DNA of 64,000 bases from Octopus bimaculoides (Eukaryota), in NCBI RefSeq assembly GCF_001194135.2, contig NC_068983.1, positions 36,278,710-36,342,709 of the forward strand, written 5' to 3'. The notes under the pieces were generated by a model. It saw only the letters and a program-made list of their open reading frames with translations. It ran no database searches and was not told the origin of the DNA. Positions 25,281 to 42,205 of this stretch are shown here, piece by piece. The translations under genes were made by a program, and so were the position numbers. Every line of letters begins with the position of its first letter. Positions within the stretch are counted from its first letter, which is position 1.

Positions 25281-28200
25281 CTGAAATTACAGAATTGGAA
25301 AAACAAATTAAGTTAATTGATTTAAAATTCATTAGAAATAGATTTTATTTTAAAACATAATGCTGAATCAAAATTGAGACATAACTTTTGAAATAAGAAA
25401 CACGACAAACCTTTTTAATTACCTTTAGTTAAAAAATCCTTAGAGGCCTATTTATGTAGCAAACCCCAAATATGCCAATGGGTGTTCATTAGGCTGCTAG
25501 AAAAAGCAGCTAAATTTACCTTGAATCACAAGCAATTATCTTAAAAATGAAGGACTCAAAGATGGTACAATAACAGTAAAACACCTTTGATTATAGAGCT
25601 GTTCAAGCATTGCTGACCTAAGGCTGAACAACAACAAAGTTTAAACTCTGTAGGGTTTCTGTCCCTTATAAGTGACCCTGCATCTGCACATGTACATATG
25701 AGTTTGAGCAAGTTGTATTGTGGAAGACTTGCAGTTGTTCATGAATGGAGGTCTTTCTTCTCTACACCACTGATGTGTATCTGTTGTGTAGACCACCGCT
25801 GTCGAAGAAGTAGGATCTCCCAAGACATATAAATAGAGGTAGTCTGGCCATGGTGGGAGTGTTGAGTAGCAGTCGAGTAGCGGTTGAGTAGAGATCATCC
25901 GAAGGTGCTAGATAGCAGTAGCTTGAGACATAACAGTATCCAAGGGAAAAGGCTGTCAACTTGTACTGATACAACTTGTACTGATACAACTTAGCACCAG
26001 TCTTGTTGTTGCAGACACTGCTGTCAAAACACAAACAACAGGAAAAAACACTGCAAAGCATCTTGCCTGACCTTCTAATAGTTCTACTAATCCACCATAG
26101 CAGATTGGTATTCTTTTATTGACCCTAAAAGGGTGAAAGGCAATGGTGACCTCAGGAGATTCTACCAATTCTCCACCTTCCAAACCTTGGAAGTAAAAAT
26201 ATACACTAAATACTTAACTTCCTCAACTAAGCTGTTGCTGCCATCACCACCACTATCATCATCATCATTTAATGTCCATCTTCCATGCTGTCATGGTTTG
26301 GATGGTTTGATGGAATCCAATCATTTTTGACTGTGTCAAACTTTAGTGTCAGCTTTGGCATGGTTTCTATGGCTGGAAGATGCCCTTCCTAATATCAACC
26401 ACCTTATAGAGTGCGCTGGGTACTATTTTCATAGCATTGGCACTAGTAAGGTTGCTAAGTAGCTTACAAGACAATGTCTTCTTACAATAAAGATGAATTG
26501 GCATTTTTATATCAAGTTTGTTTAATGCAGTTAAGATTTTTATAAAATAAAATAAAATATTAACTTACGATTCATTATTGCTGTTCAATAGGAGGTATTT
26601 TTTAATAACCAGAACCTGCGTATGGTTTAAGCCTTCGTAGTTCACATCAAGACCTGTGATATCTACAGAGGAAATACCATCTTTCATTTCACTTGGACAC
26701 ACATCATGTAGAAGAGCAGCTATATCAGGCATAGACTTTGATAGACTCTTGTTTTCTGTGTTAAGAGTTAAATAGTTCTCATTTGGTTCAGTCAGCAATG
26801 GTTCTTCTGGAACATTTACTGGAGTTGTTTCTTCTTCATTTTCATTGTTTTCATGATCAGGACTCAAATGAGAAGAGCAAGTTGAACTCACTCCGCTTGA
26901 ACTGCGGATACTGTCTGAACTTACATGTTTGTAGAGACTTTGTCGATTCTCTTTATGAGTTGAACCTGAGTTCCATGAGAATCTTTTATGAATAGTATTA
27001 TCAGGATGTTCTTTTCTTTTAAGTTCTTGGATAGAATCAGCAGTATTGTACCGTTTTTCAGTCTTGCGTTTTCTTTCTGATTTACATTTTGTCTCTTCTG
27101 CAACTCCTCGTGAAAGCCAGTCAGAACTAGCACAAGATGGCATTGAATGGCTTGTCTTCATTTCTGAGGTTGGCAGCAGAAGAGAAGAACCTGTTTGTGT
27201 TTCTGGAGATGGACTTTCACAGACAATAAGTGGGCTTATCATTGTTTGTTCAGAAGTGCTGTTCTGAAGCTTTTGTTTGGTAAAAGAGAAAGAGTTTGGT
27301 CGGCTTTTCTCATGAAACTTTGGGGAAGGAGAAGGATCAGTAAATTTATCATATTTTCCTTCCTGGAATGAACTTCGGTATTGTATTTTTGGAGAAGTTT
27401 TAATGTCCCCTATGGTTTGGTATAGCTGATGTCGAACAGGTTGGTTAGCTTCATTAAACAAGAGCTGAAAAAAAAAAAAAAAAATTACTTTGTCACAGCA
27501 AATCTATTTATTGCAATGATTATAAGACTTGTGATAAGAAGGACATTGACTAAAAATGAAAATTTAATGCCTAGATGAGGTAGAACAATTAGAAGAGTGA
27601 AAAGATTTTATCAGTTTTTTTATTTTTTTAATAAGCTGTTTTTCAACCTTTATTGATCAAGTCTCTTTCAGTAAAAAGTGAATTCAACCAACTAACTACC
27701 TGAAATCTTTGGCAGACGTAAAGAATGTGGACCACACCCCCTTGTTTTTTTTGGAGCTATGTATTTTACTCAAGAATAGTCCTCCCCAAAGTGGAAGTAC
27801 TTCCACCTTCTCTCGAGGAAAATTTTATATGGACACTAGTGACAAAAGGAGCAGTTGATGTATTTGTATAGTTTTTTCTAGTCTTTGTCATCTATTTAAA
27901 TATGATTATAAGACTTTAATCATAATAAAGTCTTGACACCAGTGTCTGCAACAACAAGACTGGTGCCAAGCTGTATCAGTTTAAGTTGATGGTCTTTTCC
28001 CTTTGATACACATCAGTGGTGTAGAGAAGAAGGACTTTCATGCATGAATAACTGGTAATCTTCCACAAAACAACTTTCCCAGGCTCATATGAACATATGC
28101 AGATGCAGGGTGACTCTTAACCCATAAAGCACTGGGATTAAGGAAAAGAGATTCTCCTAGAGAGAATCTCTTTTCCCTTTTTTTAGTTGCTGTGTCTGGG

Positions 28201-30538: not shown

Positions 30539-30591
<53 letters not shown>

Positions 30592-31176
30592 CACACATAT
30601 TGTTAAAGAGGACAAAAAAAAATGTTAAGGCAAGGCAAACATCTCAAATCATATACATTATTATTATTGGATGTTTACAACATCAGGATTTTAATCCACA
30701 TGGATCTACATAGGATTATACCTGAAGACTTATGCATTTGTTTCTACAACATTGGAAAGTTGAACTATGAACTTTTATGCTTCTTTTTTCTTCTCTCTCT
30801 CTTCATTTCCTTATTCCTTTACTCCCTTCCTCTATGCCATCATTCCATTAATATATACCCTTCTGATTTTTCCCTATTTTTCCCTATTTGTCTCTGATGA
30901 TGGAATATCCCATACTCGGGGATATTCCAGAAACAGCTGTAAGACTTTGAATTTGTTCCAATAATAACAATGCATATGACTTGAGATGTTTGCCTTGCCT
31001 TAATGTTTGTTGTCCTCTTTAATAATTATATATCTGCTGCATCGGAAATTTTCAATGGCTCCATAACTACTGTTTCAGCTATAACCTTGGAGCCCTAGTA
31101 ATCCGTTACAGCACTTACCTAGCGTACCTAATCATCTAGATCACCTGTGAACTAAACCCCCCATATCTTGTATACT

Positions 31177-31222
<46 letters not shown>

Positions 31223-34200
31223 ATTTACCATGTGAACTATGATGAAAAAATATGAGTAAGATATGGTATATAATTTTTTTTTGTGTAGGGCTACCTTGAG
31301 ACGTAATTTATTTTAAGGGTTATGTAAGGGTAAAAAAATGACAAACACTCGTTTAGATTGAAGGTTTCACCAAGACTTTCATAATTAATGAGTTATACAC
31401 TTGGCATTATTAATGCCATTGACTATTTGAATGTTATAGCCCTGGGCTGACCAAAACCTTGTGAATGAATTAGGCAGATGGAAACTGAAATAAGTCATCA
31501 TATGTGTATGTGAGTGTGTCCTTGTTTTGACAAGTAAAGGTTGGTGACAGGAAAGGCATCTGTTTATAGAGTATCTCCTGAAGAAGGCTTGTCTAACTTG
31601 TGTCAACAAGGAAAAAAAACAAACATAAAAATGACAATGATGATGATTTTTGTTAAAAAAGTCAAGGCAGACAACTCTGAAATCTAAACTGATAAAAATA
31701 TGAATTGGGAGTGGGGTTTCATGCAGTGGAGATTGAGATTTTATATACAATGTTTGGAATGATAAACTACAATTCTTTTTTTTCTTTACTTTTTTTTTTT
31801 GCTTTGTTGATATGTTAGCTAAGAGTGGAGGGACAGTACCCATGACCTCTGCAGACCCTCTTCTCAGTCTGGTTATATTCATACATAATGAGGCAACAAT
31901 TTATTTTAATTACATGACACTGATTTCAGCCTAGCTCTTGTTGCTAGTGTGATGAATGCCTTTGTGTTTTATACATATAATTAAAAAACAAATCCGGAAT
32001 CCTTTCAGAGACCACAAATTAAAGGAAAAAGAACAAACAGTTGATGGATTGAGACATTTACACAGAACATTGTTTTTTTTTTTTTTTTTTGTAGTTCTGC
32101 ACTCACAAAAGTGAAATCGTAGCTGACAATTAAAACTGGTTCCACAACCTTAAACAACAACTAACATATGAAAGGACTGTACTAACGATAATAAGTAATT
32201 GATTTTGATTATTTCTTAAGTACAAAACCAAAAATGCAAGAGGAAGACATTTCAAGATTGTGTAACATTTAGGCCTTTCTCAATCAAAAGCATTAGTGAT
32301 ATCAACATAATGAATTTACTTTAACAATGAACTGAAACTGGCTCTCAATCAGCTAGAAATAGCAGCCAAATCTCCACCAAATCACACCCTATTATTTTGA
32401 AAAAGGAAGGAAATGTTGGATAATGTCTCTGAAATCGTGATGGCACCTGTGCCCAGCGTCGCCTTTCTGGCACTTGTGCCCGTGGCATGTGTAAGGACTT
32501 TCGAGCGAGATTTCTGCCAGTGCCCCTGGACTAGCTCTTGTGCAGGTGGCACATAAAATACACCATTTTGAGCGTGGCTGTTGCCAGTACCGCCTGACTG
32601 GCCTTCGTGCCGGTGGCATGTAAAAGCACCCACTACACTCTTGGAGTGGTTGGTGTTAGGAAGGGCATCCAGCTGTAGAAACTCTGCCAGATCAGATTGG
32701 AGCTTGGCGTAGCCATCCGGTTTCACCAGTCCTCAGTCAAATCGTCCAACCTATGCTAGCATGGAAAGCGGACGTTAAACGATGATGATGATGATGATGA
32801 TATAAAAATGCAATAGTTACAGCTGGAATGTCTTTGAGGTAAGGTCTCCAGGCTCAAGGTTGACCTAGAGCTAAGCAACAACAATAACTAAAATGTTCTT
32901 TTCTACTCAAGGCACAGGGCTTGAAATTTGTGGGGAGGAGGCCAGTTGATTAGATCGACCCCAGTACGCTACTAGTACTTAATTTATTGACCCCGAAAGG
33001 ATGAAAGGCAAAGTCGATCTCAGCAGAATTTGAACTCAGAACGTAAAGACAGATGAAATATCACTAAGCATTTCACCCGGTGTGCTAACGTTTCTTATTT
33101 CTTTACTGCCCACAAGGGGCTACACACAGAGGGGACAAACAAGGACAGACAAACGGATTAAGTCGATTATATCGACCCCAGTGTGTAACTGTTACTTATT
33201 TAATCAACCCCGAAAGGATGAAAGGCAAAGTTGACCTCGGCAGAATTTGAACTCAGGATGTAGTGGCAGACAAAATACTGCTAAGCATTTCGCTTGTTGT
33301 GCTAACGTTTCTGCCAGCTCGCCGCCTTAACAATAACTAAAATAAGATCAACGTCAACATACTGAATCTGATGACATAACACAAATAAGGTGCACCATTT
33401 GTTCAGAAACAAAATGTCTTTAAAAAAAAATCACCCCAGGACCTATATGCAAAGTTGGGCCTTTCATAAGCTTTAATACATTAAAAACATTTTTCCAGAA
33501 TATGCACACTGTTGAAATTGGGGTGTATCTATTATACCTATTTGTCTTTCATACCGTCAAATATGGTAATCATACTTTTCAAAGTTGGAAAAATTCATTA
33601 ATTCAAGAGGAATTTTCACTAGATTTCAATAATTAATGGAATTGTAAAAATAATAATCTCACAAATGTTAATCACAAGATAAAACAAAACAAAAACAAAA
33701 AAAAAAGGTTATTGAAAAATCCAATAAAAAAGGGGGCATTAAGAAAAAAAAAATCAATGAAAATGCAAATTTACCTTTGTCTTTGAGTTCTGCAAGGCTA
33801 ATTTGATCAACTCTAATTGGTGGTTTCAATACTTTCAGACGATCATTAAGTTTTTTCAATTTGCATATAAGCAGAAGGTCAGTGAAAAGATAACATTCGA
33901 CATCTTGCTGCTGGGAGAACAAAACAAAAAGCTTTAGTATAACAATTCCTGTCCCACATCATTTTTTTTTCTGTTTTAACAACAACCCCATTTCATGTCT
34001 CAAAAGTTATAGTGACTCATACACCACTACCACTTAATAACCAGTATTGGGTTTGTTTACATCCCCATAACTTAGTGGTTCAGCAAGAGATTGATAGAAT
34101 AAATACTAGACTTTAAAAAAAGCAAACAAACAAAAAAATCTAAGTAGTAGGGGTAATTTGTTTGATTAAGACCCTTCAAAGTGGTGCCACAACATGGCTA

Positions 34201-37200
34201 CATACAAAACTTTGGAAGAAATGGGAAATTGTGAAAGGACTCCAGTGGAGGATTGAAACCACACTGTGTGTAGAGTAAGATTACTGGAGACTTAGTTCTT
34301 GCTGCATGGTATTCAACACCACCAGCACAACAATAAATAATAATAATAATAATGTGAAGATAGTGCCAATTTTTGCCTGGTCGTTGGGGATAGTAATAGG
34401 AAACATCAAGAAATGGTAATAATAATCACTTCCACTATCGGCACAGGGCCTGAAATTTTTGGGGAAGGGATAAGTTGATTACATTGACCCAGTGTTTCAC
34501 TGGTACTTAATTTATCGACCCCCAAAAGGATGAAAGGCAAAGTCAACCTAATGTGAAGATAGTGCTGATTATTGTTGGGTCCTTGGGGAAAGTGTCAGAA
34601 AACATGAAGAGGAATATCAAGGAAATTGGAATAGAGTGCCCCGTAGAACTTTTTCAAAAGGTTTGCCTTCTTGGCACAAACACAATAATCAGGATAGTTG
34701 AAAAGAACAGATAGCATGGTACTGTAGGCTGCAGGCAGCAAGCCCACTATGCATGCAAGACTCCAGGAGTTTCAACAAAACCCAAGTAATTGAATGAAAC
34801 AGAACATCTCAAAATAAATAGAGCAACAAAAGGGTTAATATGGATCTAGGAGTCAATTTATCCATGATCATCATGTCTTTTGTCTTTCTCAATTATGATG
34901 TATCTAAGACTACATGTCTTTTCTCTTTTCTAAAACAAGTGGTTGTGATTTTAGAGAGATCTAGCAGCTCTTTTTAGCACTTTAAATGACTACATAGAAG
35001 ATCTCTCTTCAGTTTGTAGTTTCTAGAATTTGGAAAAATTAAATCTAGTGGCTACAAATAAATCTATAAAACCTTTTATGAATGAAAGACAGCAAAATTT
35101 TAAAATATTATCACATTTTAACTCTCTCCTTTAAGCATTTCTCATGTAATTTCAACATTATCATCATCACCACCAACTCTTTCTAAAAATAATAGTGATT
35201 ATCATCATCATCATTACTTAACATCCACTGGTATTGGCTGGGTAGTTTGGCAGGATGCAATGGGTTCAAAGACTGTCTCATGCTCTGATGTCGGGTTTTG
35301 CATACTTTTTATGGCCAAACACCCTTCCTAATGTCAACCACTTTATAGAGTTTACTGGATGCTTCTTTTTTCACACCATTGGCACTAATGAGATTGCCAG
35401 ATAACTTGAAAGGCATTAAAGAAAAGGAGAAAAGGTAAAAAAAAGATCCTTTAAGTGTAGCCATTCAAAAGCTGAAAGTAGACAACCCTGTACAGGGTGC
35501 TTTTTTCCTTTAACAGGGTAAGACTATAGTAGAAAGGGAGGCAGCTTTATGTTCAGGCAAGAGGGATTAAAGTAAGAGAGAAAAATGCAACAATTAAAAA
35601 GACAAAATTAACTGTAACAATGCGATAACAATTTATAAAATAAGCAAAATTTTACCCGGACTGTAGAATCTTTAAACTTCATGCTACAGTGGTGCAGCAA
35701 ACAGCGGCTTTGTTTGGCAAGGTAATTTGGCATTTGTGATGTAAGGGTAAATTTTTGATTGTAATGATTCAAAAGCTGAAAATAAACAATCAGATAGAAT
35801 TTATATATAGATATCATTTCATCATCATCGTTTTAACACCTACTTTTCCATGCTTGCTAAGGAAGATTTTCTACAGCTGGATGCTCTTCCTGTCATATTT
35901 CTCAATGGCCAGTATTATTTTTGCAAAATACTGCAATTGAATAACACAGTTTGTACGATAGTGACATTAATTTACAACTGTCACACTTAGTCAAGACAAA
36001 GGGAAACAAAGATGTGTACACACACCACACACACACATATATATAGTTGGAATTTACAAGAAAACAAAAGACGAAGACAGGTGTGTAAACAACAAACAGG
36101 TGTATTAGTTTAATGCTCGGGAAGGTGAGAAAGTCTTTTATGTTTTGAGCTTATGCTCTTCAACAGAAAGGAATACGAGAAAATAAACAGAGAGAGAATA
36201 AAAAAGCTTTAGTGGCTAGCAGTCAATCATGGCGATGGCCAGACAGAGGTGGTCAGACAAGAGAGCTAAGAAGAAGGGAAGATAATAAAGTAGTGGTGAT
36301 CCCAAAACGAAGGTGCACATGCGTGTATATGAGAGCGTGTGGATGGATATATATATATATATATATATATGTATTAATGCTTGTTTTTATGTTCATTTAT
36401 AATAAAAACAATTTTACATTAATCTGGTGGATTACTCTATACTTTTGTAGAGTACAAATATATTATTCCTAAACAAGAATGCTGTTGACAGTGATTTTGA
36501 AGTTTTGGCCAGCTAAGCCATAGTTGGAATGTGATGCATTATAGTTAGACTTGTCTTTATATAGTCTTTGTTGAGTTAAAATCATCTTTGGGTGTGTGGG
36601 TTTAAGGTGGGAATTAAATTTTTACGGCTGGTTGATATGGAAAAGCGTTTTGGAAAAATTTGAATTGATTAAATTTGGGGTGATGTTCATCATCATCATC
36701 ATCATCATTATTTAACATCCACTTTCCATGCTAGCAAGGGTTGGATGGTTTGACTGAGAACTGGCCAGCTGGGGGTTGCACCAGGCTCCAATCTGATTTG
36801 GCAAGGTTTCTACAGCTGGATGCCTTTCCTAACACCAACCACACTGAGAGTGTAGTGGGTGCTTTTTATGTGTCACCATCATGGGAGCCAGTCAGGGAGC
36901 ACTGGCACCGATGACGTTTGGATGGTGCTTTTCATGTGCCACCAGTATGGGAGCCAGTCAGGGGGTACTAGCATTGACTATGTTCAGATGATGCTTTTTA
37001 TGTGCCACCAGCACAGGAGCCAGTCAGTGGGCACTGGCATTGGCCACATATGCATGGTACTTTTTTACATGTCACTGGCATGAGAGCCAGTCAGGGGCGA
37101 CTGGCATTGACCGATGGCACTGTTATTGTTTAGAATTCATTCATGCATGTAGAACTATATAAACAAGCCTGTAGGTGTTTCTCTTTTGTTGGGTAGGCAC

Positions 37201-40200
37201 AAGGTGTGACAGAATTTTTGTTACTGTTGGTATTATTGGATTGAATCTTTTTGCTCTGACAACATAAAGGTCAAAGGTATAAAGTCCAGTATTTAGGCCC
37301 TTAGCAATTGTATGTGTCAACTTTATTTTACAAAAGTAGGTGGTGGGTTTAAGCTGGTCAATTCTTTACTTGCTGCAGTTATTATTTAAGGTATTTCTTG
37401 TTTTCATTTGTAAAAGTTTGGGCTATTAGTCAGGTATGTCATGGCTTTGTTAGTATAGGAAGTTGTTTCTCTTGTGCTTTGATGTTCACAAAAGTATTTG
37501 AGTAAAGGTTGTATATTTATATGTCTCTGTAGATGTTCACTGTTCCATAAACAGTATAATTAGTATACAGGAATGTTAACCTGCCTGTTTTATGGAAGTA
37601 GAGTTTGGTGTTTGCTTACAAAATTTCTTCAAATTCTGTTCTAGATATATGACCTTAGCAGAGATAAGCAACATTGTGGGTCTTTACATATTAAAAAAAT
37701 TACATAACAAATTCCCATCTTCTTGCTGCTAAGCTTCACTTGTTTCCAAGTCCTGACATTTTTTCATGGAACTTGAGAACAAATGACATTGTTTATATGA
37801 CAGTGATAGTTGTTTAGAATTCGCTCACAATGCCAAGACAAGAAGGGAGACAGACAGAAGACAGAAAGACACAAACACATGCTCACACACACATGCATGA
37901 CTGATTTTTTCTATTTGTCAACTAAATCCACTCACAGAACTTTGGTCAGCCCTGGAGCTACAGTACAATATATTTTCCCATGATACTGTGCAATGGGACT
38001 CAATCAAAACAATGTGGCTGCAAAACAAAGTTCTTAACCAGACAACCATGATTAAAAATGCAATAAAATAAAAATCCTGTTAAATTACCTTAACACATTC
38101 TTCATTGGGAGCTTCACAACCTTCATAAGATTCAATCCGAGAAGCAATTGCATTTAACTTATCACTTTCTCGTTTTTCGCCAACAATGAGATTCACATCA
38201 CTGACAAAATTCTCCACTGTCTGGATCTGGTAATGAAAGTAAAATAAGTTTATAACAAATAATTATACTATAACAGATAGTTGCATCATAACAGATTTAT
38301 TTTGTTAATTAAACCCTTTTGTGGCAATATTTCTAATAAGCAAATTTGATATGAGTTTTAATTAAATTTTCAACACAAAGTTGAAGAGGTTTAGTAACAT
38401 ATCTGTTGCCATCGTCATTGTCATCGATTAACGTCCGTTTTCCATGCTGGCATGGGTTGGATGGTTTGACTGAGGTCTGGAGAGGCAGTGGCTGCACCAG
38501 GCTCCAATCTGGTCTGGCAGAGTTTCTACAGCTGGATGCCCTTCCTAACTCCAACCACTCCGAGAGTGTAGTGATTGTTTTTTATGTGCCACTGGCACAG
38601 GAGGCAGTAAGGCGGGCCTGGCAACAATCATGTTCAGATGGTGCTTTTTACGTGCCATCAGCACAGGAGCCAGTCAGTGGGTACTGGCATCAGTCACGAT
38701 TGTTTGGTGCTTTTTACGTGCCACCGGCACTGGAGCCAGTAAGGTGGGCCTAGCAACAAACACGTTCGGATGGTGCTTATATATATATATGTCTTTATTG
38801 CCCACAGGGGGATAAACATAGAGGAGACAAACATAGACAGATAAAGGGATTAAGTCAATGTAATTGACCCCAGTGTGTAACTGGGACTTATTTAATTGAC
38901 CCTGAAAGGATGAAAAGCAAAGGTGAATTTGAACAGCGGAATTTGAACTTAGAATGTAACAGCAGACGAAATACCGCCAAGTATTTTTCCCGGCATGCTA
39001 ACGAGTGGTTGGCATTAGGAAGGGCATCCAGCTGTAGAAAACTTGCAAGATCAGATTGGAGCCTGGCACAACCTACTGGTTTGCCAGTCCCCAGTCAAAC
39101 CGTCCAACCCATGCCAGCATGGAAAGTGGATGTTAAAGATTGATGATGATAATGGTAGTGTATTATGCATACATTTTTATGGTATATTTTTTCCTATAGC
39201 ATATCTATAAGAATAATATATGCCAGTGGTTCCCAATCTGTGGTCCACAGTGGTAGTACTAGGGGTCTGTGATCATGTTAAGCTGACAGACCTTTCAATA
39301 TCCAGGGGTCTATGGGACAACTCATTTAAATATAAGGAGTCCTTGGTAGTGAAAAGGCTGGGTATCACTGATAAATGCCATTTGCTACCAGTGGTATAAC
39401 AAGATTTCTCAGTACCCAGAGTAGGTGGGTCAGAAGTTCAAAGATATTATAAACACATTTCCATGAGCATTAATTAACAGGTATGATAAGCCAAAGAAAA
39501 TTTTTCACCCCTTTGCACCTGCATCAAGAAAGCGGGGGGAATGACTCCACTCTTGCAATGCCTCTGTTTGCTAATATATTATGTACTTTGATAAACAATA
39601 CAATAGCAAGTAGCATATACCATCAATCATTTATGACTTGTTCATTGATATTGCATACTCTTATCTATATTAAAATGGGTGTCAGTGACAAGGAGGTAAA
39701 TTTATAACAAAAAGCCTCAACAGTTTATACAGTAAAGTATAAGGAAAAGAACGTGATAAAATACAAAAGTGTATGTGTGTGTGTTAGATAGTTAAAATGT
39801 CTACCACAATAAAATGTCTTAGTTTCAATATATGAACTCAAATAAAAATTCTTGGATGGTTATAGCTGGAATAACTTATAATTTTCTCAAGACCATCTTG
39901 GACTATCAACAAGAAGATAGTCTCAAAGAGATTGCTTAACCTGCTAGAAATAGCAGTCAAGTCTTCCTCAATTCACATCTACTAAAATCAGAACACATAG
40001 GAGAATATTGTCCTGGAAGGCTATTGATCATAGTTTTGATTGATCAAAATTGATCTGAGGTTTGGATATTTTACATCATGATGTCTTTGCTCTTTGAAAG
40101 AACATTCCTAAATAAATAGGAAATAAATAGGAATCAGATCTGTTATCTAACACAGGTGCGCAATGGGACTGAACCCGGAACCATGTGGTTGGGAAGCAAA

Positions 40201-42205
40201 CTTCTTGCTACACAGCCACGCCTGCACTTATAAATGTAAATACAAAATATTTCGAGATGCAATTGCGGTGAGGTTAAAGTGTTGGATTACTGATCACACA
40301 GTCACAAGTTCAAAACTTACTGCTACAGCTATTCCAAGTAAAAATGCGATAGATGAATGGATAAAATACTGAGGCATCATATCATTGGCTGCTATTTCAT
40401 TTTTACAACCAATATTTCTTTGAGTTTCTGAACGAATACATTTTCTACATATCATCTGTAATAGTCTGGTATCCTATCCAGAGGAATTATATCTCTTTTA
40501 TGCACAATGTTGTGAAACTTGAGCTAAGCCCCAGTTTCCCTCTCATGGCTTAAACCTTTTGATACCAAACTGCCTGAGAGCACTCCTGGTTCTATAATAT
40601 AAACTTCCTGCTTTATAGCTATCTAAACCCTTCCATTTCAAAACACCAGCCTAATAATCCTTTCTGTTATAGGAACAAGGCCTGAAATTTTGGAGGAAAG
40701 GGTTAGTTGATTACATTGCCCCAGTAGTCAACTGGTGTTTAATTTATAAACCCCCTCCCCCCAAAGGATGAGAGACAAAGTTCACCTTGGCAGAATTTGA
40801 ATGTAAAGACAGACAAAATGCTGCTAAGAATTTTGTCCGATGTACTAACAATTTTGCCAGCTTGACAGTTATTTGAATAAATTCTTAAGTTTCAAAATTA
40901 ATTGAAACAAAGACAATGTATTTTCAACAGAAATATGGTAGCGAAAGAGTTAAGAATCATACATATGATAGAAGTTGGCTTGATAAGAGTATGACCAATT
41001 CTTAATGACCTCTTATGACTTAAGAGAAATACACCTTAGGTTTATTTCTATAGCCATTAGGTAGAGCCTGGGCAAGAACATAACTCTGTTTGCTTCAGTC
41101 CTCTTGACCCTAAAACTGGGTTCACAGTAGAGTGCTCAACCCTTTTGCATTTAAACCGGCCAAAATATTCTATCTGTTTTATGTTCAAATTGGCCAGATC
41201 CAGGCTCTCTCACCTGCCCTAAAATGTTATTGTAAAAATAAATAATCACATCAACAATGTGAATAACTAAGCATTACATTTGGCAGAGTAATCTGAATAC
41301 TGAAGGGTTAATATTAAAATGAGCAAATAACAGTGTAATAACTATTTGTAACACTGCTGCATATGTCTCTCTGTGAGATTTATAATTAGATCATTTCTAA
41401 TTTTGTAACCAGTGAATGTGTTTTCACTGAAAATATATATATTTGTGAAGGCTAGACATGCTTTTTCAGCCAGCCAGCTGGTCGGCTACTTCAGGCTGAT
41501 GACGAGCAATGACTCAGAAACATGTCCCTGAATGCAGACTAGGCTGGGTGGGGAGGCTTGTCTCCCCTTCACAAATATAAGGACACAGGAAATGTGTCAA
41601 GGCCAACAGGAATCGGTCGAGCTTCCTAGGGCTAAATAGCAGCAGTATGATTCCCTTAATGGGTCTGTCACATTAAGTTGACAGTAAACAACTGCTTAAT
41701 CGTAACACTGCTGCTTATGTCTCTCTGTGAGATTTATAAAGAAATTTGTAGAAGATACAAGTGAGTGTAAATTAGTGTGGATTATGAGAGGTTCTGGACC
41801 ATTAGTGTCTGGAAAGTCGATGTTGTATTTGTAATAGAAGGGAAAATAAATGGTAAACACTGAAGTGAAAGACCTAGTTTGATTCCATCAAGGTCTGGAC
41901 AAAATTATCATATGGCAAATGTGTAAAAATGGTAGATACATGTAAAAAGGGATGTTTGTAAGAAAATGATTCAAAGAGCAATTAGAAATATGTTTATTGA
42001 AAATGTGGAGGATAAAATTAAAAGTTACCATTTTTTCAAGATCCTCTTTTTGTTTTTCTTCTACTGACGTCTCTTTGATACGACGCAGCAACAGTGAATA
42101 TCGTGTCAGGCGTTGCATTGGTGTAATTATAATGTCAATCAATCGTAGCCGTTTGCACAAGTTGGTGTTGCTTTCAGCCCACTGCAATGGACAAATATAT
42201 CTTTT

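What the first reader, a model, noticed from the sequence alone, without database searches (positions are those of the whole stretch)
41348..41739. Retrozyme-like 354-bp unit: intact hammerhead at the apex of a long hairpin, with 38-bp terminal redundancy
Seen in sequence: the same 38-mer (1 mismatch) occurs at 41348 and 41702, giving a 354-bp period. Inside is a minimal type I hammerhead (6-bp stem I, CTGATGA and GAAA boxes, palindromic ACATGT stem III, GUC site at 41524-41526). Stem I extends through CCAGCC/GGCTGG and a 24-nt inverted repeat (41438-41461/41556-41579). No ORF is present. Established: metazoan non-LTR retrozymes are non-coding monomers of a few hundred nt, each carrying a minimal type I hammerhead and yielding circular RNAs, and palindromic stem III motifs act as dimers. 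Inference: this is a 1.1-mer reverse-transcribed from a circular or multimeric RNA, and marks a cephalopod retrozyme family whose novelty I cannot verify. With one ribozyme, this locus alone could not excise a monomer.
Basis: partly seen in the sequence, partly recalled or inferred. Interest (0 to 1): 0.9.

Follow-up and report, generated by a model that had tools for sequence, protein, structure and literature searches.

The report
Solo hammerhead retrozyme copy with tail
This is one non-coding copy, about 1.1 units long, of a small mobile element carrying a hammerhead self-cleaving RNA motif, lying backwards in a gene's intron; the kind is already known in animals, and this copy cannot make an RNA circle by itself.

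Summary
A 38-mer with one mismatch recurs at 41348 and 41702, a period of 354 bp. Between the copies lies a type I hammerhead-like motif (41490-41532, + strand) at the tip of a long hairpin, with no ORF. It is not chance: my descriptor hit 0 of 1000 shuffled windows. A covariance model built only from four experimentally active retrozyme hammerheads ranks it first in the window (21.5 bits, E about 5e-4). Unpaired positions match the axolotl retrozyme ribozyme, while the helices differ in sequence but still pair.

There are caveats. No Rfam hammerhead model matches it, even at E up to 10. Helix II has only three pairs plus a C.A mismatch. No second copy was found in the window or in any collection I could search, so no family is shown.

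Best reading (about 0.6): a solo, slightly longer-than-unit cDNA copy of a retrozyme-type non-autonomous element. The 38-bp redundancy fits the 30-40 bp "tail" typical of Penelope-like-element integration. No RT or GIY-YIG coding sequence lies within about 4.5 kb. The copy is antisense in an intron, next to a RhoGEF exon.

It is a new member of a known kind, of modest interest. A second, unrelated hammerhead-like motif lies at 30894-30941.

The parts
41348..41701 (+). One 354-nt non-coding unit of the element
   Evidence: Period 354 comes from the direct repeat. No ORF exceeds 39 aa. GC is 42.7% against 35% in both flanks. The fold has z -7.05 linear and z -7.2 circular with 65% paired. No other copy exists in the window.
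41348..41385 (+). 5' copy of the 38-nt terminal repeat (weaker similarity back to 41343)
   Evidence: ACUGCUGC at 41353-41360 pairs with GCAGCAGU at 41639-41646 in the predicted fold.
41702..41739 (+). 3' copy of the 38-nt repeat, read as the extra 'tail' of a longer-than-unit copy
   Evidence: It has one mismatch to 41348-41385. Similarity ends sharply after 41739. The length is within the 30-40 bp PLE tail range (PMC8557442; PMC11167929; a 31-bp example in PMC3846280).
41490..41532 (+). Type I hammerhead-like motif. Helix I 41490-41495 / 41527-41532; CUGAUGA 41496-41502; helix II and loop 41503-41516; GAAA 41517-41520; palindrome ACAUGU 41520-41525; C17 at 41526; predicted cut between 41526 and 41527
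   Evidence: Sequence. Descriptor expects 0.007 per shuffled window and gave 0 of 1000 shuffles. CM R1, built from four active retrozyme hammerheads, scores 21.5 bits, E about 5e-4, with one non-standard pair. Alignment with the axolotl HHRs. No Rfam match.
41438..41475 (+). 5' arm of the long hairpin that continues helix I
   Evidence: Inverted repeat I1, 38 nt, 79% complementary; fold.
41542..41579 (+). 3' arm of the long hairpin that continues helix I
41344..41350 (.). Candidate left copy of a 7-bp target-site duplication or microhomology, ATTTGTA (tentative)
   Evidence: The same 7-mer sits at both outer boundaries. About 1% of random position pairs in the window do as well. This is post hoc.
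41744..41750 (.). Candidate right copy of ATTTGTA (tentative)
42029..42148 (-). Context: host-gene exon fragment encoding part of a RhoGEF (DH) domain; the element lies about 290 bp away in the adjoining intron, in antisense orientation
   Evidence: Pfam PF00621, E 6.1e-8, 33.5 bits, above the 27.6 cut-off; coordinates. Exon ends were judged by eye only.

Best explanation
The locus is a solo, slightly longer-than-unit (about 1.1-mer) DNA copy of a small non-coding retroelement of the animal 'non-LTR retrozyme' type.

Inferred life cycle of an active source element:
- Tandem units are transcribed.
- Neighbouring hammerheads pair through the palindromic ACAUGU to form an active double ribozyme, which cuts after GUC.
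- The 354-nt monomers are ligated into circles.
- A reverse transcriptase supplied in trans, most likely from a Penelope-like element (PLE), copies a multimeric or circular template from an internal start site.
- Copying runs 38 nt past one unit length. This gives the terminal redundancy, which is the PLE 'tail'.

This particular copy landed antisense in an intron of a RhoGEF-type gene. It has one ribozyme with a weakened helix II, so it cannot release a monomer or make a circle. The host pre-mRNA carries only the complement of the ribozyme.

Shown: the anatomy, that the motif is not chance, and the absence of coding capacity nearby. Inferred: the RNA circle, the PLE machinery, and the existence of a family.
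For: 1. The motif is real.
- Every core position is present, with 6-bp helix I and a palindromic helix III.
- It gave 0 hits in 1000 shuffled windows.
- It is the top hit of a covariance model built without it from four retrozyme hammerheads that self-cleave in vitro: 21.5 bits, against at most 11.6 bits in 43 kb of related-species DNA.

2. It has the retrozyme-type design. Published canonical metazoan type I motifs have helix I of 6 bp, helix II of 4 bp, and helix III of 1-2 bp with a 2-4 nt palindromic loop. GAAACAUGUC is identical to axolotl Rtz_331. The unpaired GCU-C and UGC beside helix I and the CA at the start of loop 2 are conserved, while both helices differ yet pair.

3. The unit matches published retrozymes. 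Those are 150-450 bp with GC below 45%. This one is 354 bp, 42.7% GC, non-coding and strongly folded.

4. The 38-bp redundancy has sharp edges. This matches the 30-40 bp tail described as unique to PLE insertions and explained by two adjacent RT start sites.

5. A candidate 7-bp duplication flanks the whole 1.1-mer. PLE target duplications reported in one rotifer are 8-10 bp.

6. No RT or GIY-YIG coding sequence lies within 37-46 kb, so this is not the repeat of a local full-length PLE.

7. Context fits. Solo monomers are a recognised retrozyme state, and PLEs are abundant in cephalopod genomes.
Against: - No second copy of the unit was found anywhere, so a repeat family, tandem arrays and fixed or permuted ends are all undemonstrated. 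The collections searched barely contain this organism.
- No Rfam hammerhead family matches, even at E up to 10.
- Helix II has a C.A mismatch at its base and only three pairs, so activity is doubtful. An axolotl retrozyme ribozyme with a U.U mismatch there still cleaves weakly.
- My model rests on four sequences and its E-values are rough.
- The 7-bp duplication was noticed after the fact.
- The 2026 preprint reports retrozymes depleted from introns, and this copy is intronic.
Confidence: 0.6

Rival explanations
1. A hammerhead-bearing insert of about 311-316 bp (41386 to 41696-41701) is flanked by an unusually long 38-43 bp target-site duplication. On this view the 38-mer is host DNA and not part of the element.
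For: Two near-identical direct repeats with sharp edges bracketing an insert is what a target duplication looks like. The 38-mer has no copy elsewhere in the window.
Against: - The one report read here gives PLE target duplications as short, 8-10 bp in a rotifer.
- The insert has no poly(A), 3' microsatellite or terminal inverted repeats and no tRNA-derived part.
- The 38-mer takes part in the unit's predicted closing helix, 41353-41360 with 41639-41646. That is weak evidence.
- A separate 7-bp repeat flanks the whole 392-400 bp.
Confidence: 0.15
2. The locus is a remnant of a local DNA-level duplication or of a once longer 354-bp tandem (satellite-like) array trimmed by deletion, not a fresh 1.1-mer cDNA.
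For: Retrozymes are typically tandem arrays that can expand or contract by unequal crossover. 1.1 units could be what is left of one.
Against: - Tandem Repeats Finder reports no array here.
- Deletion would have to leave exactly 38 nt, which is inside the PLE tail range.
- Both edges are sharp, with no decayed repeat beyond them.
- A candidate short duplication flanks the unit.
Confidence: 0.1
3. The locus is a fragment of an autonomous Penelope-like element, for example a pseudo-LTR with tail, and not a separate non-autonomous family.
For: PLE pseudo-LTRs carry hammerheads and tails, and solo pLTRs occur. Retrozymes are themselves related to pLTRs.
Against: - No RT or GIY-YIG remnant lies within about 4.5 kb either side.
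- A redundancy with a 354-bp period needs a 354-nt template unit. A truncated 3-kb element would not repeat its own start.
- The ribozyme has the canonical retrozyme design, not the long-helix-II, short-helix-I minimal design of autonomous PLEs.
Confidence: 0.1
4. The resemblance is chance: an ordinary structured or repeat-rich stretch that happens to contain CUGAUGA and GAAA boxes.
For: There is no Rfam match. Helix II is weak. The sequence is single-copy in everything searched.
Against: - It gave 0 of 1000 shuffles.
- The independent model gives E about 5e-4.
- Conserved unpaired nucleotides outside the descriptor match the axolotl ribozyme.
- Four further features coincide: the long hairpin, the GC step, the bracketing repeat, and a second hammerhead-like motif in the same window.
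Confidence: 0.05

Closest known systems
Metazoan non-LTR retrozymes (Cervera and de la Pena 2020, PMC7229834), for example axolotl Rtz_331/Rtz_353 and mussel Mg353
   Same: - It is a non-coding unit of a few hundred bp (354 here; 331, 353 and 353 there) with GC below 45% and a strongly paired predicted RNA.
- It has one type I hammerhead per unit, with 6-bp helix I, 4-position helix II and a tiny palindromic helix III.
- GAAACAUGUC is identical to Rtz_331, and the unpaired nucleotides beside helix I are conserved.
   Different: - There are only 1.11 units here, not a tandem array.
- No family is demonstrated.
- There is no sequence similarity outside the ribozyme.
- Helix II carries a C.A mismatch.
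- Expression, cleavage and circles are untested.
Penelope-like elements and their 'tail' signature (PMC8557442, PMC11167929, PMC3846280)
   Same: The locus has a hammerhead motif, a 38-bp terminal extension within the 30-40 bp tail range, a possible short target duplication, and a longer-than-unit organisation.
   Different: There is no RT/GIY-YIG ORF at or near the locus. The unit is about 10 times shorter. The ribozyme is of the canonical rather than the minimal PLE design.
Newt/salamander satellite 2 and Schistosoma Sm-alpha hammerhead repeats (named from my own knowledge and from the introductions of the papers read)
   Same: These are units of about 330 bp with a type I hammerhead that works better as a dimer.
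   Different: Those are high-copy tandem or SINE-like families with shown transcripts. No tRNA-like part and no copies were found here.
Rfam Hammerhead_1 (RF00163) and related hammerhead families
   Same: The core boxes and three-helix layout are read from the sequence.
   Different: There is no match at the gathering score or at E up to 10.

Membership tests
Hammerhead ribozyme, type I | Conserved core: CUGANGA, GAAA, A15.1-U16.1, and a cleavage-site base that is not G | tested here: met
   CUGAUGA at 41496-41502, GAAA at 41517-41520, A41520-U41525, C41526.
Hammerhead ribozyme, type I | Three helices around the core, with helix I open-ended | tested here: inconclusive
   Helix I has 6 bp. Helix III is 1 bp plus the CAUG loop, a 6-nt palindrome. 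Helix II has only 3 standard pairs plus a C10.1.A11.1 mismatch, where G10.1-C11.1 is usual.
Hammerhead ribozyme, type I | Match to a curated Rfam hammerhead covariance model | tested here: not met
   There is no hammerhead family at gathering threshold over the window, nor at E up to 10 over 701 nt or 91 nt.
Hammerhead ribozyme, type I | Match to a model of experimentally active retrozyme hammerheads | tested here: met
   CM R1 was built from 4 sequences that exclude this one. It scores 21.5 bits, E about 5e-4, top of the window. The best score in 43 kb of control DNA is 11.6 bits. The model is small and its E-values are rough.
Hammerhead ribozyme, type I | Self-cleavage at the predicted site | not testable with these tools
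   This needs in vitro transcription of monomer and dimer constructs.
Non-LTR retrozyme | Non-coding unit of about 150-450 bp with low GC | tested here: met
   The unit is 354 bp with a longest ORF of 39 aa and GC of 42.7%.
Non-LTR retrozyme | Head-to-tail tandem copies, each with a hammerhead (dimer or more) | tested here: not met
   There are 1.11 units and one hammerhead. This fits only the 'solo/monomer' category.
Non-LTR retrozyme | Multi-copy family in the genome | not testable with these tools
   The source genome is not available. There is no copy in the window or in any collection searched.
Non-LTR retrozyme | Expressed as linear and circular monomer RNA | not testable with these tools
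   No transcript data are available.
Penelope-like element (autonomous) | ORF with reverse transcriptase and GIY-YIG endonuclease | tested here: not met
   A Pfam scan of all open segments of at least 40 aa in 37-46 kb found only RhoGEF.
Penelope-like element (integration signature) | Optional 30-40 bp 3' extension ('tail') that repeats the start of the unit | tested here: met
   38 bp at 41702-41739 repeat 41348-41385. A long target duplication is not excluded.
Penelope-like element (integration signature) | Short target-site duplication | tested here: inconclusive
   ATTTGTA occurs at 41344-41350 and 41744-41750. About 1% of random position pairs match as well. This is post hoc.

The most novel reading that the evidence does not exclude
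The 38-nt overhang is a true Penelope-type 'tail' on a retrozyme-type monomer. That would be direct structural evidence that retrozyme RNAs are integrated by PLE reverse transcriptase/endonuclease starting at a defined internal site. It would also mark an undescribed retrozyme family in this (probably cephalopod) lineage. The 2026 preprint that links retrozymes to PLEs argues from sequence relatedness and does not mention tails.
Probability: 0.35. Interest if true: 0.5.

Novelty: new member of a known kind. Interest (0 to 1): 0.3.

Why it matters
If the source genome holds a family of these units, it would add a cephalopod-type lineage to the animals known to carry retrozymes. It would also give a simple, testable marker, a fixed 30-40 nt overhang on solo copies, for the proposal that Penelope-like elements mobilise retrozymes. 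For this locus alone the practical consequence is small. It is a dead, antisense intronic insertion with a weakened ribozyme, and it does not place a ribozyme in the host transcript.

Tried and rejected
Searches that found nothing:
- Rfam over the whole window at gathering threshold, and over 701 nt and 91 nt at E up to 10: no hammerhead.
- BLASTN of the unit against the window: no paralogue.
- Six-frame pseudo-protein of the unit against 5.8 billion proteins, hoping for spurious ORFs on related contigs: none at E up to 10.
- Specific hammerhead pattern in metagenome, bacterial/archaeal genome and viral contigs: 0 hits each.
- Looser pattern in metagenomes: 9 hits, all without proper helices, about the number expected by chance.

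Orthologous-locus and empty-site test:
- The 298-aa exon finds only relatives at 56% identity or less, with no names.
- Their contigs L001, L002 and L012 hold neither the element nor a hammerhead.
- The RhoGEF exon found no candidate at all.

Other checks:
- There is no tRNA-derived SINE part. The bacterial promoter/terminator scan was uninformative.
- The redundancy does not extend beyond the 38-43-mer.
- The two hammerhead elements of the window share no sequence.
- MAFFT misaligned helix II when all five hammerheads were aligned, so no formal pair count was made. The CM alignment was used instead.

Full report
**What is there**

Positions 41343-41385 and 41697-41739 are a 43-nt direct repeat at 93% identity. 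The strict 38-mer, 41348-41385 and 41702-41739, has one mismatch. The spacing is 354 bp. Local alignment of the outer flanks against the matching inner parts of the unit is no better than shuffles, so the repeat has sharp edges.

Between the copies, on the + strand, lies a type I hammerhead layout:
- Helix I: UUCAGG (41490-41495) with CCUGAA (41527-41532).
- CUGAUGA at 41496-41502.
- Helix II: CGAG / CUCA around loop CAAUGA (41503-41516).
- GAAA at 41517-41520.
- A15.1-U16.1 closing a CAUG loop, so that ACAUGU is a 6-nt palindrome.
- C17 at 41526.

Helix I continues outward. After an internal loop (UAC on the 5' side, U on the 3' side) come GC/GC, UGGUC/GACUA and CCAGCC/GGCUGG. Beyond these lies a 38-nt inverted repeat, 41438-41475 / 41542-41579, 79% complementary.

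The folds are far more stable than shuffles. The 161-nt hairpin has z -6.2. The 354-nt unit has z -7.05. The circular 354-mer has z -7.2 with 65% of bases paired. The longest ORF touching the unit is 39 aa. The unit is 42.7% GC, against 35% in each 1-kb flank.

**Is it more than chance?**

A relaxed hammerhead descriptor finds this single site in the window. It expects 0.007 sites per shuffled 64 kb. A second descriptor requires a palindromic helix III, helix I of at least 4 bp, helix II of at least 3 bp, and at least 9 pairs in helices I and II together. It finds two sites in the window and none in 1000 shuffled windows.

Rfam does not agree. No hammerhead family matches at gathering threshold, or at E up to 10 when only 701 nt or 91 nt are searched.

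I therefore made an independent test. The supplement of PMC7229834 prints four genomic retrozymes that were transcribed and shown to self-cleave, from coral, mussel and two from axolotl. I aligned their hammerheads and wrote the three-helix structure. With that model I searched the window with filters off. The finding's motif is the best hit at 21.5 bits, E about 5e-4. Only the first pair of helix II is flagged as non-standard. In 43 kb of DNA from related species the same model scores at most 11.6 bits. The model is small and its E-values are rough, but it never saw this sequence.

**What kind of hammerhead is it?**

PMC4209133 separates two designs.
- Canonical metazoan type I motifs have helix I of 6 bp, helix II of 4 bp, and helix III of 1-2 bp capped by a 2-4 nt palindromic loop.
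- 'Minimal' motifs of autonomous Penelope-like elements (PLEs) have a long helix II and a short helix I.

The coral supplement legend assigns the canonical type to retrozymes and the minimal types to autonomous elements.

Alignment with the two axolotl ribozymes shows that GAAACAUGUC is identical to Rtz_331. GCU-C just 5' of helix I, UGC just 3' of it, and the CA that opens loop 2 are conserved. Both helices differ in sequence yet still pair. That is the pattern expected of a structured RNA of the same class.

The weak point is helix II: three pairs plus C10.1.A11.1, where G10.1-C11.1 is the norm. There is a precedent. The axolotl Rtz_353 ribozyme has a U.U mismatch at the same place and still cleaves about 22% in an hour. 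The mismatch here could be decay of this copy, from U-A by a T-to-C change or from C-G by a CpG-to-CpA change. That is inference only. Motifs with such a small palindromic helix III cleave poorly as monomers and much better as dimers.

**What is the 354 + 38 arrangement?**

A redundancy with a 354-bp period requires a template that repeats every 354 nt, either a tandem transcript or a circle. A truncated 3-kb element would not repeat its own start.

The literature on PLEs describes an optional 30-40 bp 'tail' at the end of insertions (PMC8557442). A 31-bp example is reported in a rotifer (PMC3846280). The tail is explained in vitro by reverse transcription starting at two adjacent internal sites, and is called a signature unique to PLEs (PMC11167929). 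Thirty-eight base pairs falls inside that range.

The PLE target duplications reported in the one paper read here (a rotifer) are short, 8-10 bp. That argues against reading the 38-43-mer itself as a target duplication. The 7-mer ATTTGTA occurs at both outer boundaries (41344-41350 and 41744-41750). Only about 1% of random position pairs in the window do as well. I noticed this after the fact and treat it as tentative.

The insert has no poly(A), no 3' microsatellite, no terminal inverted repeats and no tRNA-like part. No RT or GIY-YIG coding remnant lies in 37-46 kb, so the locus is not the pseudo-LTR of a resident full-length PLE.

**Surroundings**

The Pfam scan of open segments found part of a RhoGEF (DH) domain on the minus strand at 42029-42148 (E 6.1e-8). 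A 298-aa coding exon lies on the same strand at 26565-27461 and has homologues at 56% identity or less. The element therefore lies in an intron, about 290 bp from an exon, antisense to the gene. The host pre-mRNA would carry the complement of the ribozyme, not the ribozyme. The flanks contain other interspersed repeats with copies elsewhere in the window.

**The family question**

This is the main gap. The unit has no second copy in the window. A six-frame pseudo-protein search of 5.8 billion predicted proteins found nothing. Exact-pattern scans of metagenome, prokaryote-genome and viral collections found nothing specific.

These collections hardly contain the source organism. The window's own exon is absent from them, and its best relatives are 56% identical. 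The negative result is therefore weak. I could not verify 'cephalopod'. The window's abundant SINE-like repeats resemble octopus SINEs from my memory only, which is a lead and not a test.

**Most likely mechanism**

For the inferred active source:
- Tandem units are transcribed.
- Adjacent hammerheads dimerise through ACAUGU and cut after GUC.
- Monomers with 5'-OH and 2',3'-cyclic phosphate ends are ligated into circles. An RtcB-type ligase is used in vitro.
- A PLE enzyme copies a multimer or circle from an internal start site and overshoots by 38 nt, leaving a short target duplication.

For this copy, a single weakened ribozyme means it cannot excise a monomer. I give this reading about 0.6.

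Rivals:
- A hammerhead-bearing insert with a 38-43 bp target duplication: 0.15.
- A trimmed tandem array or local duplication: 0.1.
- A fragment of an autonomous PLE: 0.1.
- Chance: 0.05.

**Comparison with what is known, and novelty**

Non-LTR retrozymes with type I hammerheads are described across animals, including a mollusc. Solo monomers are a recognised and often common state. Retrozymes have been argued to be PLE derivatives. Rfam scanning reported 235 Hammerhead_1 hits in the giant squid. Penelope elements are abundant and recently active in octopus.

The finding is therefore at most a new member of a known kind. It meets the unit-level criteria for a retrozyme. It fails the tandem criterion at this locus. 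Family-level and RNA-level criteria cannot be tested here.

The one angle that seems unreported in the papers I read is the tail-length overhang on a retrozyme-type monomer. The 2026 preprint does not mention tails. A single locus cannot establish it.

**Seen in passing**

The same model found a second hammerhead-like motif at 30890-30945 (+), scoring 16.3 bits, E about 0.02.
- Helix II is a perfect 11 bp, helix I is 4 bp, and helix III is the palindrome ACAGCUGU with a GUA site. This is the 'minimal' PLE-like design.
- It sits between 80-nt inverted-repeat arms, in a fold with z -9.1.
- (TA)n microsatellites lie on both sides. (TA)n is a reported preferred PLE target.
- No RT lies nearby, and it shares no sequence with the first element.

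Its presence raises the prior that hammerhead-bearing retroelements populate this genome.

Noticed in passing
window 30890-30945 (+), within about 30592-31176: A second hammerhead-like motif of a different design. CUGAUGA at 30894-30900; perfect 11-bp helix II (30901-30929); GAAA at 30930-30933; palindrome ACAGCUGU; GUA site with A17 at 30941; helix I only 4 bp (GUCU/AGAC). CM R1 gives 16.3 bits, E about 0.02, and the descriptor gave 0 hits in 1000 shuffles. It resembles the 'minimal' hammerheads of Penelope-like elements. It lies between 80-nt inverted arms 30592-30671 / 30957-31036, with fold z -9.1. It shares no sequence with the 41348 element, and no RT lies within 28.5-32.3 kb.
   Followed up: partly
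window 30544-30590 and 31177-31224: (TA)n microsatellites bracket the second hammerhead element on both sides. (TA)n is a reported preferred insertion target of some Penelope-like clades, so this may be an insertion into a microsatellite.
   Followed up: no
window 42029-42148 (-) and 26565-27461 (-): Host gene on the minus strand. One exon fragment matches the RhoGEF/DH domain (PF00621, E 6.1e-8). A 298-aa open exon has homologues at 56% identity or less on unnamed ENA and Logan contigs. Both hammerhead elements lie between these two exons, antisense to them. I did not test whether the two exons belong to one gene.
   Followed up: partly
window about 42.6-43.0 kb (+) and about 49-50 kb: Open segments with a shared C-terminal-like motif, for example FIPVIIGTLGYV...LEKLGF...IQSITGTVKVCKAFQKF and ISIVIRALGSIP...LKTLEI...LQKLALLGSAHILCKLL. 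From memory they look like 3' ends of truncated LINE-type retrotransposon ORFs. Pfam gave no hit.
   Followed up: no
window about 15-16 kb: An open segment with a reverse-transcriptase-like FADD motif (GCVLAPALFSLY...FADDSALVAH), seen in the six-frame listing. It is probably a LINE RT fragment and is not PLE-like by eye. It was not scanned against Pfam.
   Followed up: no
window 36860-37111 and 38579-38778: Two 66-bp-period tandem arrays of related sequence, 3-4 copies each at 75% identity. Many SINE-like interspersed repeats are shared between distant parts of the window.
   Followed up: no
locus L001 4942-6405 (-): The related-species contig that carries the exon homologue has a 487-aa ORF with an RVT_1 domain about 3.6 kb from that exon. 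The type of retroelement was not determined.
   Followed up: no
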